Below the pieces are notes generated by a model. It was not told where the DNA came from. It ran no database searches and was given only the letters and a program-made list of their open reading frames with translations. Position numbers and translations under genes: made by a program. Below are positions 58,826 to 63,810 of a stretch of DNA of 64,000 bases, piece after piece (positions within the stretch are counted from its first letter, which is position 1; the number at the start of each line of letters is the position of its first letter). Source of the DNA: Orbicella franksi (Eukaryota); contig OZ116706.1 in NCBI GenBank assembly GCA_964199315.1, positions 5,642,001 through 5,706,000 on the forward strand, written 5' to 3'.

Positions 58826-61800
58826 ATGAGGGCATTTGTAGTTTTACTCTTGGCTGGATATGCTATGTTATGCCAGTCAGGTAAGCACAGTTTCAATTCG
58901 TTTATTTGGAGATCTATTTTACAATCAGGTTACTTGTCCTCGTTTTCTATGAGCGAATAGTCAAAGAGACGTAGCCGGAGTTGACAATTTGCTCACAGAA
59001 AACGAGGGCAAGTAGTCTAATTGTTTTGGTAGACACTCTAAAGATTAGAACACAAAGCCGACAATTTTGTGAATTTTTAACCTATAAGTTAGAATACTTT
59101 TCAGTTTCAAGAGCAGTCAAGGCGAGCGCGATCTTTGTCTATCACCGAATAGAAAACAACGAGGGAACCAATCAGATTCGCGTATTTCCAACAGAAGAAA
59201 GCTGAGAGCCCACTACTGATTTGTTATAATGATTATGTGGATGAAAGGTTGTAACTTTGTCCCATGACTGGTTTATGCATATGCACGCGCGGCATTTATA
59301 CCACGGGTCCTCGCCTCCGCGCACAAAAATTTGCACGCCACTTTTAACATTAAACATTGTCCGAGGCCAGAATTGTCGTAGGGTTTAAAGAATTTAGTAA
59401 TTTCGCTTGAATTGTTGATTAAGTAATTAAGGAGGTTGTAGATTTAATTTACAGGAAACAATTCAGAGACTTGTCAAAACCATTATCTCGCAGCAAATGT
59501 GCAACGTCTCAAACTGCTCTAACTTACTTGTTTGCTTTTTTTTATTTCCATGCAGGATCCATAAAGAGAATTAAAAGAGGTAAGAATTACCGTATGTGAA
59601 AGTGTGTAGTATTAAGGATGGCATTCGGGTCACGTTGCTCACACGAACTGTTTCGGTAAAGGAGGCGACTTTGAGAATAGGTTTTTCCATCCCCGAATAA
59701 GATGCTAGTTCAGCATTCTGCAAGGTCGCCGTAACGGCTCACTAGTATCTATTAATACTCCTGGTGGGGGAAAGACACTGTAAGAAAAGAGCGTCTTGTC
59801 CAAGCCGAATATACAAAGATGATCTCTGCAAGGGCTTGAACTCAGGTGATTAACCTACTATATAAGTCCAAGAAGCGTAGAATAAGCTTTCCTTCTCCTA
59901 ATGAGACATCGTTGCAGTCCACTGACAACTAAGGCTCAAGTCCTCGGAAACACGCACATCTACCCTGATCATAGCAAGAGCTTCACCGGATCACCCACGA
60001 CAACTTATTGTTATAGTAATACCGTTTGTTGCTTAGCAACGCGACTGGTTTTATAACTCTAGAAGTTCTTTTCTCCCACAGGATACCTCTCGAGGACTGG
60101 TTTGTGTGTTAAGCCTGAGGCCAACTTTAAAATAAAAGACCCTCGGCTGAATTTTTGGGGCGTGGCATATGTGCTGCCAGATGACGCTAACCCCAAATGT
60201 ACTGAGTCTGAGTGTTCGGAAGACAGTCACTGTGACGCTGACCGGAAGTGCTGTAGGAACTACTGTGGAGGCATGGTGTGCACACCTACAAGTAAGCACT
60301 ATTCTTCTCGGCCACTTCCGAGTTGCCTTTTGCCTGGGTGTCAAAACGAGTCTTCATGCCAAACCATTCATATGAAAATGCGTTCCGCCTACTGGTTCAT
60401 TTTCATGCAAATCACACTCATTTTCATATAAAAGGTTCGTTTTGAAACAGAGACACAAGGTAACTCGGAAATGGCCTATTTACGAAGAACGCTACAGGGC
60501 AAGGTTGACGCCTTCCGTTAATGAGAGTTTCCCACTTAGGAGTGAAATGCTTTCGCTTAAATTGTTAAAGAGCTCAGTCACGGTATTTTGAATTATTTTG
60601 GCCACGTACAAAATTACCTTTAAATGGTAGGAAATCTGAAAATAACAGTTTAATAAGATAGAAAAACACCAAAGACTTAATGATAAACCATAAAGGAACA
60701 AGGATGGCTAAGGATGGAGAAGATTAACACGGATTACAAACGACGAATTTGAAAAATTGAGGCTAAACTTTTCAATATGCGGAAACCGTGACTGAGCTCC
60801 TTTAATAAAGGAATTGAAAGTTAGTTTAAAGCCTCAGGATTCAGCGTAAGGGATCGGCCGCAGGGCTCACTTGCATGCAGGGCTAAGGTTTATCTACGAT
60901 AAAGGGGCAAGGAGTGAAGATATACCTTCCCTGGACAGAAAGCTTATCCATTGCAGGCAAGAGACCATGATCTTGTCGCAGGTTATTCTCTAGCTTTTTC
61001 CTTTTTACCTTGTCACAACAATTTTGATGTCACCAACAATGATTCTAAACTTTCATGTTGTGTGGTGAGATGGCCCTTTTAAAAATCTTAACCTTGTATC
61101 TCTTCTTTTCTTTCAGTGCGAGATCCAGACCCGTGCAAGGTATGTTAAGTTAAGCTACGTGCCAAGGATATTATTTGAAAGCGATTTCTATTAAAACCCG
61201 ATTTTTTGCAATAAGCGATTTCCGAGTTACTTTTTACCTCTGTTCAAAACGAGTCCTGGTGCACAACCTTTCATTATCTTTCATATGGAAATGAGTTTGA
61301 TTTGCAAGACAATGAACATGCTAGAAAAACTAGCTTTAATATGAAAGCTTGTGAACGGAGACTCGTTTTGAAACAGAGGTAAGAGCAACTTGGAAATGGC
61401 TTATTGATTGAGACGCTGCAAATTTACAACCACCTGCATCTCATTATCTGATATATCTGCATTCCGTTCCTTTAAAAGGCTGTCTGATTGTTTCTCCATA
61501 AGTTCCTGTATTTCAGTTCGCGGTTGACAATCCAAAACTCCCGAGTTTCAATTGACAAAATTTCCCCGAGAAAACCACAACAAAACAACAACACAACAAA
61601 TTTTCCATGGCGCAAGCGCTCTTCCGCAAAATCCGGGAACTTTTATTTGCAACTCTAAATTTCAATATGTCAATCAATCCTCGCGTGTGACTTATGTCAA
61701 TCAATCAATGTGTAAATCAATCCTCGCGTGTGACTTCCGGTGAAAGTAATTCCCGGTTCGCTCTCACAAAAACTATTTTCTAAGAAATGGGGAAGACAAA

Positions 61801-63810
61801 ATAACACTAATCTCGTTTTCTTCCTTTTTGGTGTTTTATCAGCAATTCAAGTGTCCTGTCGGTCAAACATGCAAGGTTCAGTACGTTCCATGCGTGATGC
61901 CCAAATGCAAAGACGCCATCGCCGTCAACAGACCAACATGTATTAAGGATCCATCAGGTACGTTTGACAAACTGACCTATCTTGGTCTCGCCTCTTTCCG
62001 ATCTACAGCGTGCAGTGTGGAGAAAACAAACTGTTTCTGTTGAGAATGGTGGGGTTGGTGAGAGACAAAATGGGGAATTTTCCGCCAACAACTTAAACGA
62101 GCTCAGTCACTGTATTTTGAGTTATTTTGGCCACATACAAAATTACCTTTAAATGGTAGGAAACCTGAAAATAACAGTTTAATAGGATAGAAAACACCAA
62201 AGAGATAATTATAAACCATAAAGGAACAAGGATGGCTAGGGATGGAGATGACTGACACAGATTACAAACGACGAATTTGAAAAATTGAGGCTAAACTTTT
62301 CAATATGCGCAAACCGTGACTGGGCTCCTTTAATAGAAAGATAATGTTTATTTACACACGAGCGTGTGAATAACCAGGAAAAAAAAAAATTTGATTCCCC
62401 AACGGGATTCAAACCCAGGAACTCTCTGACACCGAGCATGCGCTCTATCCCCTACGAAGAGACTCAGGGTGGGCAAGGGCATGTACCAGGCTCATATAGA
62501 CAAAAGTTTCACAAACTGCGAGAATCAGGAAAGTCGAGAGCGTACTGCGGGCTTCACATTAACCATATGTCTTTATGTACTGCCATATAGAACGCTCTTG
62601 ACATGATAAGCCCGCAGAACAGGTAGTTTGGTGAGGTAGAACGTGAGGCGCTAAGCGTTTGTGTCACGTTCCGCGCTCTGACCCGGTAGTAAGGAACATT
62701 GCGTTTGTTTTCCTATCTAACTAACGAGCTAACAATTTTCTATCTATTTTCAATTATCAACATCTTTTAAACGTTGCTCTCTTTGGTTCTATGTGATCCT
62801 GCTTCTTCTACAGCGGCCGCACCTCCTCCAGGTAAGGAAAATCAGATTTGGAGAATTAAAAGCTTTTGTCTCTAAAATAGAATTGAACGTATGGCATCGC
62901 GGGAGGGCTAGTAAGACGTCACAGCAACTTCCGTTGCCTTTACCGAGCCCAACCTAGCCTGTTCTATTCGTTTGGTTAGAAGTGGGAAGTCAATGCGAAG
63001 CACGAGTGGAAACTGAAAAGGCGAGGAAATTGGGGCGAGAAGGGGTCACTTTCTTCCCAGATTCCACTCGTTCTTGCACTCGCCTTGGTCCCCTTTCGTA
63101 CGCCCTCGCCAACCCAGAGCCTAGAACAGGCTGAGCCAACCCAAGCTACGGTGAACTGGTGTCAGCCGAGAGAAAACGCAACTGATGTCCTTTCTTAGTG
63201 CAACTACCTTTCATCGTCTGTTCGTCCATATATGTGTCCATTGTTCAAGAAGTAAAGGTTCCATTCCCCAATGTTGTATTGAAATTGGTCAAAAGAAACA
63301 GACTGTACTTTTTGTTTTCTCGCAGCAATGCCTCCGGCAGCACCAGCGATCCCGGCCCAAGGAGCCTATGGACCTCCTATGGCCCAGCAACCGCTGGCAT
63401 ACCAACCGCAGCCACAGGCACCTCAAGCGTCTTTCATGCAGCCACCAATGGCGCCCATGACAGCAGCCATGCCACCGGCCATGCCACCGGGAATGCCACC
63501 TATGGGTGCATTTCAAAACGACGAACTTGGTAATGAAGCCGGTTTATTACCCGGTTTAGGAGGAAATCAACCTGGTATGGAAACTGGTCTTAGCGATGCT
63601 TCCTTGATTAACGCCCTCCAAAATGAAAATCAGGGGCCGGGGCTTCAAAACGATAAACTACCACCAAGCGAACAGAGTAATTTTTTTCCACCGCCACTAG
63701 CATATGAACAGCAGCAACCCTTAGCAGATGCGCCGGCGAGCGAACCTCCAGCGGCTAATCCCGTGATCGCACCGCAACCTGGCTGGGAAAGAAGTTCAAG
63801 AGTTCACTAA
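58826..63810 (+). CDS. Secreted WAP-domain protein with a second Cys-rich module and Pro/Gln-rich tail (7 exons, 309 aa)
   Basis: Phase-consistent GT-AG exons: 58826-58880 (signal MRAFVVLLLAGYAMLCQS), 59556-59579 (GSIKRIKR), 60082-60291 (WAP: C-x30-C-x4-C-x5-C-x5-CC-x3-C-x4-C), 61117-61139 (MRDPDPCK), 61843-61957 (QFKCPVGQTCKVQYVPCVMPKCKDAIAVNRPTCIKDPS), 62814-62831 (AAAPPP), 63326-63810 (Pro/Ala/Gln/Met-rich, TAA). Total 930 nt. Confidence 0.85.
59690..59830 (-). mobile_element. Decayed SINE fragment (same family as 44041-44324)
   Basis: ttaatactcctggtgggggaaagacactgtaagaaaagagcgtcttgtccaag is a degenerate reverse complement of the central domain of the 44-kb SINE. Confidence 0.5.
60310..60480. 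mobile_element. TTCCGAGTT-type MITE
   Basis: ggccacttccgagtt ... aactcggaaatggcc inverted ends; inner aaaacgagtc / ttcgtttt. Confidence 0.6.
60569..60801 (-). mobile_element. Kolobok-like MITE, copy 2
   Basis: TTAA 60565-60568 and 60802-60805; reverse complement of 30928-31164. Confidence 0.85.
61210..61405. mobile_element. TTCCGAGTT-type MITE, second copy
   Basis: aataagcgatttccgagtt ... aacttggaaatggcttatt; inner aaaacgagtc / gactcgtttt. Confidence 0.6.
62097..62329 (-). mobile_element. Kolobok-like MITE, copy 3
   Basis: TTAA 62093-62096 and 62330-62333; colinear with copy 2. Confidence 0.85.
62345..62600 (-). mobile_element. Repeat with internal tRNA-like segment (SINE-like)
   Basis: Minus strand ggatagagcgcatgctcggtgtcagagagttcctgggtttgaatcccgttgggga followed by a T run; boundaries approximate. 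Confidence 0.6.
62955..63133. mobile_element. TAGCCTG-type MITE
   Basis: TIR tagcctgttcta / tagaacaggctg. Confidence 0.55.

What the first reader, a model, noticed from the sequence alone, without database searches (positions are those of the whole stretch)
58826..63810. Unnamed modular secreted protein: signal - KRIKR - WAP - 6-Cys module - Pro/Gln/Met tail
Seen: a clean 7-exon, 309-aa model with 14 cysteines in two modules and a ~165-aa low-complexity tail (AMPPAMPPGMPPMG, QQP repeats, acidic distal part, almost no Lys or Cys). Known: WAP domains occur in protease inhibitors and antimicrobials (elafin/trappin with a Gln-rich transglutaminase anchor; crustins with Pro- or Gly-rich and Cys-rich regions) and in biomineral matrix proteins. 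Signal-propeptide-KR-Cys-rich-polyproline is also the layout of nematocyst minicollagens. Inference: a lineage-specific effector for mucus or immune defence, skeletal matrix or cnidocyte capsule, possibly cross-linked or condensed through its tail. I do not recognise this architecture as a named family.
Basis: partly seen in the sequence, partly recalled or inferred. Interest (0 to 1): 0.7.

Follow-up and report, generated by a model that had tools for sequence, protein, structure and literature searches.

The report
Pan-cnidarian secreted WAP–6-Cys protein gene
This is a real, expressed coral gene for a secreted protein (a WAP domain, a second small cysteine module and a floppy proline/glutamine-rich tail) that belongs to an unnamed, unstudied family found in corals, anemones, jellyfish and Hydra, with a core that has barely changed.

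Summary
The 7-exon, 309-aa model is correct. All six introns are GT..AG, and each appears as a joint in RNA contigs from 3-4 independent studies.

The gene is not a coral-lineage novelty. It is the Orbicella-type copy of an unstudied family found across Cnidaria: stony corals, sea anemones, octocorals, a scyphozoan, Hydra and Clytia. It appears single-copy in this genome; copy number was not tested elsewhere.

Features conserved in 26 members:
- a signal peptide;
- an R-x-K/R-R convertase site (22/26), or a signal peptide ending at the same Gly (4/26);
- a WAP domain with a conserved 28-33-aa insert between Cys1 and Cys2;
- a 6-Cys module absent from Pfam, weakly follistatin-N/EGF-like.

The tail varies by lineage.

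Among stony corals the core has dN/dS of about 0.01-0.08 and the tail 0.18-0.29. Three intron positions are shared with Hydra. The elafin/SLPI-type inhibitory loop spacing is absent, and core pI ranges from 5.2 to 9.0.

I therefore favour a conserved extracellular binding module over a fast-evolving defence peptide. The function itself is untested. I found no paper on the family, and the scan has not reported it on other DNA.

The parts
58797..58825 (+). 5'UTR (minimum extent). It holds a 2-codon upstream ORF, ATG AGG TGA, at 58814-58822.
   Evidence: The RNA contig of X1 begins at 58797. The sequence was read.
58826..58880 (+). Exon 1: start codon and signal peptide. It has an MR n-region, a 13-residue hydrophobic stretch and a C-Q-S c-region, and it ends in phase 1.
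   Evidence: The joint 58880/59556 is seen in X1, X2 and X13. The signal peptide is inferred from the sequence; no predictor was run.
59556..59579 (+). Exon 2: 24-nt mini-exon encoding S-I-K-R-I-K-R, an R-x-K-R proprotein-convertase-type site. The Gly codon of the mature N-terminus is split by the next intron (phase 1).
   Evidence: The R-x-K/R-R site is present in 22 of 26 family members. Hydra has the same intron position and phase.
60082..60291 (+). Exon 3: a symmetric phase 1-1 exon. It encodes the conserved mature N-terminus (G-Y-L-S-R-T-G-L-C) and the whole WAP four-disulfide domain, with a 30-aa conserved insert between Cys1 and Cys2.
   Evidence: Pfam WAP 27.3 bits against a cut-off of 20.8. 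PDB profile hit to nawaprin, E 1.4e-4. The four best structural matches are all WAP chains, Z 3.9-4.3. Alignments A1-A3.
61117..61139 (+). Exon 4: 23-nt exon encoding the linker R-D-P-D-P and the first Cys of the 6-Cys module.
   Evidence: Joints 60291/61117 and 61139/61843 are seen in all four runs. In Hydra the intron after 'P-C-x' sits at the same place and phase.
61843..61957 (+). Exon 5: the remaining five Cys of the 6-Cys module, with spacing C-x4-C-x5-C-x6-C-x4-C-x10-C.
   Evidence: All six Cys are invariant in 26 sequences. There is no Pfam family: FOLN scores 15.3 and 18.9 bits in relatives against a cut-off of 21.1. Weak fold matches to SPARC, hevin and follistatin FS domains. This part of the model has pLDDT 66-89.
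62814..62831 (+). Exon 6: 18-nt micro-exon (A-A-A-P-P-P) at the start of the tail.
   Evidence: Joint 62831/63326 is seen in all four runs. An 18-letter gap in the X1 contig lies between the exon 5 and exon 7 pieces.
63326..63810 (+). Exon 7: 161 aa of the acidic Pro/Ala/Gln/Met-rich tail, plus the stop codon. Islands conserved among stony corals include Q-N-D-E, T-G-L-S-D-A and P-Q-P-G-W-E-R-S.
   Evidence: dN/dS is 0.18-0.29. The exon is held by 20 public runs, 10 of them recorded as RNA.
63811..64000 (+). 3'UTR, which runs off the end of the window.
   Evidence: RNA contigs continue past 64000; the X1 contig has 218 further letters.

Best explanation
Shown:
- This is an expressed, apparently single-copy gene for a secreted protein.
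- It is the Orbicella-type orthologue of an unnamed pan-cnidarian family.

Inferred from sequence:
- After signal-peptide removal, a furin-type convertase cuts at R-I-K-R. This exposes an invariant Gly seven residues before the first WAP cysteine.

The mature protein has two parts:
- A 111-aa, seven-disulfide core. It is a WAP domain whose Cys1-Cys2 loop is replaced by a conserved ~30-aa insert, followed directly by a follistatin-N/EGF-like 6-Cys module.
- A ~170-aa acidic tail rich in Pro, Ala, Gln and Met, presumably disordered.

Proposed mechanism (inferred, about 50% likely):
- The rigid core is a high-affinity extracellular binding module for a conserved endogenous partner, either a protease or a secreted ligand or matrix component.
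- It binds through the family-specific insert and the free N-terminus, not through the classical elafin/SLPI loop.
- The lineage-variable tail positions or anchors the core in the extracellular matrix or mucus layer. One possible route is Gln-donor cross-linking.
For: - Gene and transcript.
- Family range and orthology. The tree separates medusozoan and anthozoan clades. Three intron positions are shared with Hydra: signal/pro, pro/mature Gly in phase 1, and inside the 6-Cys module in phase 0.
- Copy number: one full copy in the own genome, plus one broken partial copy.
- Core constraint: 88-95% identity among stony corals, against 43-80% for the tail. dN/dS is 0.011-0.012 for the core where dS is about 2, and 0.08 in the closest pair. 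The tail gives 0.18-0.29.
- Precise N-terminus: 22 of 26 members have R-x-K/R-R just before the invariant Gly. In the other 4 the signal peptide abuts that same Gly.
- Invariant positions: all 14 Cys, plus N15, R22 and G27 of the insert, are invariant in 26 sequences; D20, L23 and N24 are nearly so.
- Against a charge-based antimicrobial mechanism: core pI ranges from 5.2 to 9.0 across the family.
- Against the classical inhibitor loop: the Cys2-Cys3 segment is only four residues (T-E-S-E). The only PDB sequence hit is nawaprin.
- Pairing of the two domains: the same WAP plus 6-Cys unit recurs in tandem in mollusc proteins at 32-39% identity. The best Swiss-Prot fold hits are the WAP-follistatin head of WFIKKN1, with probability 0.93-0.94 and E 0.02.
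Against: - No activity, partner, cell type or localisation was established here.
- The structure models are only moderate (mean pLDDT 65 and 69).
- All fold matches are statistically weak: Z at most 4.3 and Foldseek E at least 0.02.
- Convertase cleavage, the signal peptide and tail disorder are inferred, not measured.
- Strong conservation would also fit a structural role.
- Waprin-like WAP domains can be antibacterial without a protease loop.
Confidence: 0.55

Rival explanations
1. A mucosal defence effector. The WAP core would act as a secreted antibacterial or anti-protease factor, like waprins, SLPI/elafin or crustins. The Gln-rich tail would tether it to mucus or matrix, as the cementoin domain does for trappin-2.
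For: - The WAP domain passes the Pfam cut-off.
- The closest solved sequence is a snake waprin, and the best fold matches are SLPI, nawaprin and omwaprin.
- In stony corals and octocorals the core is basic (pI 8.0-9.0) and the tail is Gln-rich.
- The transcript is present in many coral holobiont RNA runs.
Against: - Core dN/dS of about 0.01 and 88-95% identity among stony corals are unlike arms-race effectors.
- In anemones and most medusozoans the core pI is 5.2-7.6.
- The elafin/SLPI loop spacing is absent.
- The family is single-copy rather than expanded.
- The tail has only one Lys and no trappin-type repeats.
Confidence: 0.2
2. A structural matrix component of a cnidarian-specific structure (cnidocyst wall or tubule) or of mesoglea or skeleton. 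The core would be a disulfide-linking unit, and the Pro/Gln/Met or Tyr-rich tail an elastic or cross-linkable segment.
For: - The family is restricted, as far as named hits go, to Cnidaria, and is present in all sampled classes.
- A short propeptide ending in K-R is common in cnidocyst proteins (my own knowledge).
- The tails are low-complexity and Pro/Gln-rich (Hexacorallia), Gln/Asn/Tyr-rich (octocorals) or end in Tyr-rich stretches (hydrozoans).
Against: - Four hydrozoan-type members lack the propeptide.
- The tail is not conserved between classes and is only 19-66 aa in most medusozoans.
- There is no minicollagen Cys pattern and no Gly-X-Y stretch.
- No small single-WAP protein stood out in the WAP rows of the Nematostella matrisome tables, though the orthologue's NV2 identifier is unknown, so this is weak.
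- The family is also present in non-calcifying cnidarians, so it cannot be skeleton-specific.
Confidence: 0.17
3. A prohormone-like precursor. Dibasic sites would release the core, or tail peptides, as signalling molecules.
For: - The R-x-K/R-R site before the core is conserved.
- Hydrozoan members carry a second conserved site, G-K-R-S-R-I-P, just after the core.
- The Nematostella tail ends in K-K-R-S-I repeats.
Against: - Anthozoan tails, including this one, have no internal dibasic site and a single Lys.
- The conserved part is a 111-aa disulfide-rich domain pair, not a short peptide.
Confidence: 0.05

Closest known systems
Snake waprins (nawaprin, omwaprin)
   Same: Both have a single WAP four-disulfide domain with a short Cys2-Cys3 segment. 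Nawaprin is the only PDB sequence hit (1udk, E 1.4e-4). Both waprins are among the four best fold matches (Z 3.9-4.1).
   Different: Waprins are ~50-aa venom peptides. They have no 30-aa Cys1-Cys2 insert, no second Cys module and no tail, and there is no evidence of orthology.
SLPI / elafin / trappin-2 (chelonianin WAP protease inhibitors)
   Same: They share the WAP fold (4doq, 2z7f). Trappin-2 also joins a WAP domain to a Gln-rich low-complexity anchoring segment.
   Different: Their protease-binding loop, an 8-residue Cys2-Cys3 segment with P1 just after Cys2, is replaced here by T-E-S-E. The trappin anchor is N-terminal and built of Gln/Lys hexapeptide repeats. Here the tail is C-terminal, non-repetitive and almost free of Lys.
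WFIKKN1/2 (GASP) N-terminal WAP-follistatin head
   Same: In both, a WAP domain is followed directly by a follistatin-type Cys module. These are the top Swiss-Prot fold hits (probability 0.93-0.94, E 0.02, 26-29% identity over 84-89 columns).
   Different: The Kazal half of the FS domain, the Ig domain, the two Kunitz domains and the NTR domain are all missing. Pfam finds only WAP. There is no significant sequence match.
Mollusc tandem WAP plus 6-Cys proteins (Babylonia areolata LOC143282961; Haliotis 'prestalk protein-like')
   Same: They carry the same two-domain unit, with WAP and the 6-Cys module adjacent. Identity is 32-39% across both domains, pairwise E 4e-11.
   Different: The unit is repeated 3-5 times in a chain. 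These proteins lack the convertase site, the conserved N-terminus, the 30-aa insert and the low-complexity tail. They are also uncharacterised.
Crustins (crustacean WAP antimicrobials)
   Same: Both are secreted proteins that combine a WAP domain with low-complexity and Cys-rich regions.
   Different: The order is reversed: crustins have the Gly- or Cys-rich region first and the WAP domain at the C-terminus. Crustins are expanded, fast-evolving families, whereas this is a single-copy gene with a core dN/dS of about 0.01.

Membership tests
WAP four-disulfide core domain (Pfam PF00095) | Profile score above the curated gathering threshold | tested here: met
   27.3 bits on exon 3 and 23.4 bits on P0027, against a cut-off of 20.8. 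All seven orthologues scanned also pass.
WAP four-disulfide core domain (Pfam PF00095) | Eight cysteines, including the central C-C pair, in WAP order | tested here: met
   The spacing is C-x30-C-x4-C-x5-C-x5-CC-x3-C-x4-C, read. All eight Cys are invariant in 26 sequences.
WAP four-disulfide core domain (Pfam PF00095) | WAP fold | tested here: inconclusive
   The four best PDB matches are all WAP chains, but Z is only 3.9-4.3 and the model pLDDT is 69. Foldseek gives rmsd 1.0-1.5 A over 30-32 columns at E 0.7-1.1.
Elafin/SLPI-type canonical WAP protease inhibitors | Exposed binding loop spanning Cys2, with about 8 residues between Cys2 and Cys3 and a hydrophobic or basic P1 just after Cys2 | tested here: not met
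   Cys2-Cys3 is T-E-S-E, four acidic or polar residues, and Cys1-Cys2 carries a 30-aa insert. The loop definition comes from my knowledge of the SLPI and elafin complexes.
Follistatin/osteonectin-like EGF domain (Pfam FOLN, PF09289) | Profile score above the gathering threshold (21.1 bits) | tested here: not met
   The window's module gives no hit. The Nematostella and Babylonia modules score 15.3 and 18.9 bits, over profile positions 1-14 of 22 only. Fold hints to SPARC, hevin and follistatin FS are weak.
WFIKKN/GASP | WAP, follistatin/Kazal, Ig, two Kunitz domains and NTR in one chain | tested here: not met
   Pfam finds only WAP in the full-length protein. The rest of the chain is a low-complexity tail.
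Minicollagens (cnidocyst wall) | Central Gly-X-Y collagen helix flanked by polyproline and by Cys-rich domains of pattern C-x3-C-x3-C-x3-C-x3-CC | tested here: not met
   Direct reading of the 309-aa protein shows no Gly-X-Y run and no such Cys pattern. The pattern itself is from my own knowledge.
Trappins (WAP plus cementoin) | N-terminal repeats of a Gln/Lys transglutaminase-substrate hexapeptide before the WAP domain | tested here: not met
   The tail is C-terminal, has one Lys and has no hexapeptide repeat.
Crustins | WAP domain at the C-terminus, preceded by Gly-rich and/or Cys-rich regions | tested here: not met
   The WAP domain starts 7 residues after the predicted mature N-terminus, and the low-complexity part follows it.
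Unnamed pan-cnidarian WAP-6Cys family (defined here: alignments A1-A3) | Mature N-terminus G-x-L/M-S-R/K-T/S-G-x-C, a WAP domain with a 28-33-aa conserved insert, a 6-Cys module, and 14 Cys in a 109-114-aa core | tested here: met
   The window protein has every invariant column of A3. It is 41-96% identical to 25 other members.

The most novel reading that the evidence does not exclude
The family is a cnidarian-specific, essential extracellular regulator. Its non-canonical WAP-follistatin-like core would trap a conserved endogenous protease or a secreted signalling ligand, much as the WAP-follistatin head of WFIKKN/GASP traps GDF8/11. Alternatively it is an indispensable factor in cnidocyst biogenesis. 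Either reading would explain why a small secreted protein has stayed nearly unchanged across stony corals and recognisable in every sampled cnidarian class.
Probability: 0.2. Interest if true: 0.65.

Novelty: new variant of a known kind. Interest (0 to 1): 0.45.

Why it matters
Small secreted cysteine-rich proteins usually evolve fast. This one has a core dN/dS of about 0.01 and is found in all sampled cnidarian classes, yet it has no name, no paper and, in one reference genome, a wrong automatic name ('histone-lysine N-methyltransferase 2D-like').

That combination marks it as a candidate for a conserved, cnidarian-specific extracellular function. Orthologues in the tractable models Nematostella, Hydra and Clytia make that function directly testable.

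The work also defines two things that are not in Pfam: a recurrent WAP plus 6-Cys didomain unit, also present in molluscs, and a WAP subtype with a large conserved insert in place of the usual Cys1-Cys2 loop.

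Tried and rejected
Literature and supplements
- Accession and locus-tag searches of the paper library found nothing relevant. I tried LOC114963916, XP_001637778, EDO45715, A7RS00, LOC5517731, XP_020604656, LOC135686199, LOC100202550, XP_002164889, XP_015758041, LOC107337410, XP_029199022, TCONS_00063926 and LOC124445693.
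- Topic searches also found no paper on this protein.
- The Nematostella matrisome supplements were searched by identifiers and by two short peptides, with no hit. The orthologue's NV2 identifier is unknown, so this is not evidence of absence.
- The Hydra nematocyst proteome paper is not held.
- The jellyfish single-cell paper has no supplements held.

Database look-ups
- The look-up of encoding contigs had no record for the Oculina and Acropora proteins.

Fold, profile and feature searches
- Foldseek against PDB and AlphaFold clusters gave no significant match.
- The ESM Atlas feature search gave only WAP, at score 0.78.
- Pfam at E up to 10 gave nothing for the tail or for the window's 6-Cys module.
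- No tRNA-like gene lies in the introns.

Ideas rejected
- Minicollagen-like, trappin-like, crustin-like and WFIKKN orthologue were all rejected on defining features; see the membership rows.
- A skeleton-specific role was rejected because non-calcifying cnidarians have the gene.

Not attempted
- I ran no complex prediction, because no partner is claimed.

Full report
**1. The observation**

I rebuilt the model from the sequence. The seven + strand exons are 58826-58880, 59556-59579, 60082-60291, 61117-61139, 61843-61957, 62814-62831 and 63326-63810. All introns are GT..AG. The CDS is 930 nt and gives 309 aa.

There are 15 Cys: one in the signal peptide, eight in the WAP domain and six in the second module. 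The tail from residue 144 has P 37, A 27, Q 18, G 14, M 10, one Lys and no Cys.

All internal coding units are phase 1-1: exons 2, 3 and 6 singly, and exons 4+5 together. This is the usual signature of shuffled extracellular modules.

**2. Transcript support**

Exon 7 is held by 20 public runs, 10 of them recorded as RNA, from 11 studies. I laid the contigs of four RNA runs from four studies on 58600-64000.
- Every predicted joint is present at the predicted GT..AG. The joints are 58880/59556, 59579/60082, 60291/61117, 61139/61843 and 62831/63326.
- The 18-nt exon 6 is also visible as 18 letters between the exon 5 and exon 7 pieces of a 1367-nt contig.
- That contig starts at 58797 and continues 218 nt beyond the window.

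**3. What the parts are**

- *WAP domain.* Pfam gives WAP for exon 3 (27.3 bits, cut-off 20.8) and nothing for the module or the tail. The match covers only profile positions 10-40. The first WAP Cys lies 30 residues upstream, so the Cys1-Cys2 loop carries a large insert.
- *Solved structures by sequence.* A family profile finds only nawaprin among all PDB sequences (E 1.4e-4).
- *Structure models.* AlphaFold models of the core are moderate, with mean pLDDT 65 from 12 sequences and 69 from 26.
- *WAP fold matches.* The four best chains in an all-against-representatives search are SLPI, nawaprin, a WAP-like cystine-dense peptide and omwaprin (Z 3.9-4.3).
- *6-Cys module.* Foldseek gives sub-significant matches to the follistatin-type (FS) domains of SPARC/BM-40, hevin and follistatin. 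Pfam FOLN scores just under threshold in two relatives (15.3 and 18.9 bits against 21.1, first hairpin only).
- *Swiss-Prot models.* The top hits are residues 44-117 (human) and 52-121 (rat) of WFIKKN1, which by my knowledge of its domain layout cover its WAP-follistatin head (probability 0.93-0.94, E 0.02).

I therefore describe the core as a WAP domain with an insert plus an unnamed follistatin-N/EGF-like 6-Cys module. Membership in FOLN is not established.

**4. The family**

Searches with the tail, the core and two profiles recovered the following, with names.
- *Near-identical proteins.* Several 309-aa proteins match almost exactly, including XP_020604656.1 of Orbicella faveolata. That record is mis-named 'histone-lysine N-methyltransferase 2D-like', evidently because of the Pro/Gln tail.
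- *Named orthologues.* Oculina, five Acropora species, two Montipora species, Actinostola, Nematostella (XP_001637778, 'WAP domain-containing protein'), Xenia, the scyphozoan Rhopilema, Hydra vulgaris (LOC100202550) and Clytia.
- *Unnamed sequences.* Several further members come from transcriptomes and from Tara Oceans data.

All 26 full members have a 109-114-aa core with exactly 14 Cys. Invariant positions are the first Gly, S4, G7, N15, R22, G27, all Cys, the N and G of the CC-x-N-x-C-G motif, R72, P76, P83 and P98.

A quick tree separates a medusozoan clade from an anthozoan clade. The branches among stony corals are very short.

The Hydra gene shares three intron positions with the window gene:
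- between the signal peptide and the pro-segment;
- inside the Gly codon of the mature N-terminus, in phase 1;
- one residue after the first Cys of the 6-Cys module, in phase 0.

This is strong evidence of orthology back to the cnidarian ancestor.

In the window's own genome there is one full copy. There is also a broken partial copy covering exon 4 to the 3'UTR. It is 83-87% identical at DNA level, has an in-frame TAA and a frame break, and has no exons 1-3 in the 10 kb fetched.

**5. Beyond Cnidaria**

No named non-cnidarian protein carries the full signature. Mollusc proteins from Babylonia and Haliotis do repeat the WAP plus 6-Cys pair in tandem. They are 32-39% identical across both domains, with pairwise E 4e-11. 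The didomain unit is therefore older than the family. The convertase site, the N-terminus, the insert and the tail are what define the cnidarian family.

**6. Constraints**

I used three orthologous coral mRNA contigs to estimate substitution rates.

| Region | dN/dS |
|---|---|
| Core, where dS is about 2 | 0.011-0.012 |
| Core, closest pair | 0.08 |
| Tail | 0.18-0.29 |

- Protein identity to the window among stony corals is 88-95% for the core and 43-80% for the tail.
- The tail keeps short conserved islands, so it is constrained, but far less than the core.
- Between classes the tail is not alignable. It is Pro/Ala/Gln and acidic in Hexacorallia, and Gln/Asn/Tyr-rich in octocorals. In medusozoans it is short and in most members basic; hydrozoan members carry a conserved G-K-R-S-R-I-P site just after the core.

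**7. Mechanism**

- *N-terminus.* R-x-K/R-R stands just before the invariant Gly in 22 of 26 members. In the four hydrozoan-type members without it, the signal peptide ends at that same Gly. Selection therefore acts on the exact N-terminus, seven residues before Cys1.
- *Inhibitor loop.* The elafin/SLPI protease-binding geometry (about 8 residues between Cys2 and Cys3, with P1 after Cys2; my own knowledge of those complexes) is absent. Here the segment is T-E-S-E. The spacing resembles waprins instead.
- *Charge.* Core pI ranges from 5.2 to 9.0. A purely cationic antimicrobial mechanism cannot be the conserved function.
- *Copy number and rate.* The gene is single-copy and has a very low dN/dS.

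Together these favour a rigid binding module with a conserved endogenous partner, with the conserved insert and N-terminus as the likely binding surface and the tail as a lineage-specific anchor. I give this about 50%.

The rivals are a mucosal defence factor (0.2), a structural cnidocyst or matrix component (0.17) and a processed precursor (0.05). Cell type would discriminate between them.

**8. Comparison and novelty**

The gene is a member of the WAP superfamily. It is not a member of the elafin/SLPI inhibitors, trappins, crustins, minicollagens or WFIKKN, because each fails on a defining feature.

The proteins are already predicted in public databases, but only as uncharacterised entries. 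I rate the finding as a new variant of a known kind with moderate interest.
- It is real, and its architecture had no name.
- Its conservation is striking for a small secreted protein.
- It offers tractable model orthologues.
- No function is shown.

Earlier notes of this scan list other WAP-containing genes in this genome, including unchecked WFIKKN-type cassettes. None concerns this gene on other DNA.

Noticed in passing
window 60567-60807 and 62096-62335: A ~240-nt element occurs twice in direct orientation, in introns 3 and 5, and the copies are 93-94% alike. It has short inverted ends. RNA-contig word depth reaches 55,000 in all four runs. This looks like a very abundant MITE-like interspersed repeat.
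   Followed up: partly
window 61209-61406, with a related copy at 60327-60480: Palindromic ~200-nt elements lie in introns 3 and 4. The arms are 66 nt long and 76% complementary. This appears to be a second MITE-like family.
   Followed up: partly
L010 = G000:C7:9913000-9922999, minus strand (match at about L010 3050-7370): A partial duplicate of this gene runs from upstream of exon 4 through the 3'UTR. It is 83-87% identical at DNA level. The exon-7-like frame has an in-frame TAA and a frame break, and no exons 1-3 lie in the 10 kb fetched. It is probably a pseudogene fragment.
   Followed up: partly
window 58814-58822: A minimal upstream ORF (ATG AGG TGA) lies in the 5'UTR. It ends 3 nt before the main ATG and sits inside the RNA contig that starts at 58797.
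   Followed up: no
window 63560: The window has G, making residue 227 Gly. All four RNA runs and all database cluster members read C, which gives Ala. This looks like an allele of the assembled individual.
   Followed up: no
P0094 (XP_020604656.1, Orbicella faveolata): The reference annotation names this 309-aa secreted WAP protein 'histone-lysine N-methyltransferase 2D-like'. The misnomer is evidently driven by the Pro/Gln-rich tail.
   Followed up: yes
L011 (Tara Oceans metagenome scaffold, 590 nt): A divergent family member (P0044, 168 aa) is encoded without any intron on a metagenomic scaffold. The Orbicella gene has six introns. The source organism is unknown, and this sequence and P0043 sit on long branches in the tree.
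   Followed up: partly
P0102, P0100, P0103, P0105 (hydrozoan-type orthologues): A second conserved dibasic motif, G-K-R-S-R-I-P-R-P or a near variant, follows the core directly. Scyphozoan-type members (P0101, P0104) keep only the R-I-P part. This suggests that the tail is cleaved off in these lineages, and that G-K-R could be an amidation signal. The motif is absent in anthozoans.
   Followed up: no
window 50654-51343, minus strand: The nearest upstream coding exon encodes part of a WD40 beta-propeller (several Pfam propeller families, best E 8e-21). It is an unrelated neighbouring gene.
   Followed up: partly
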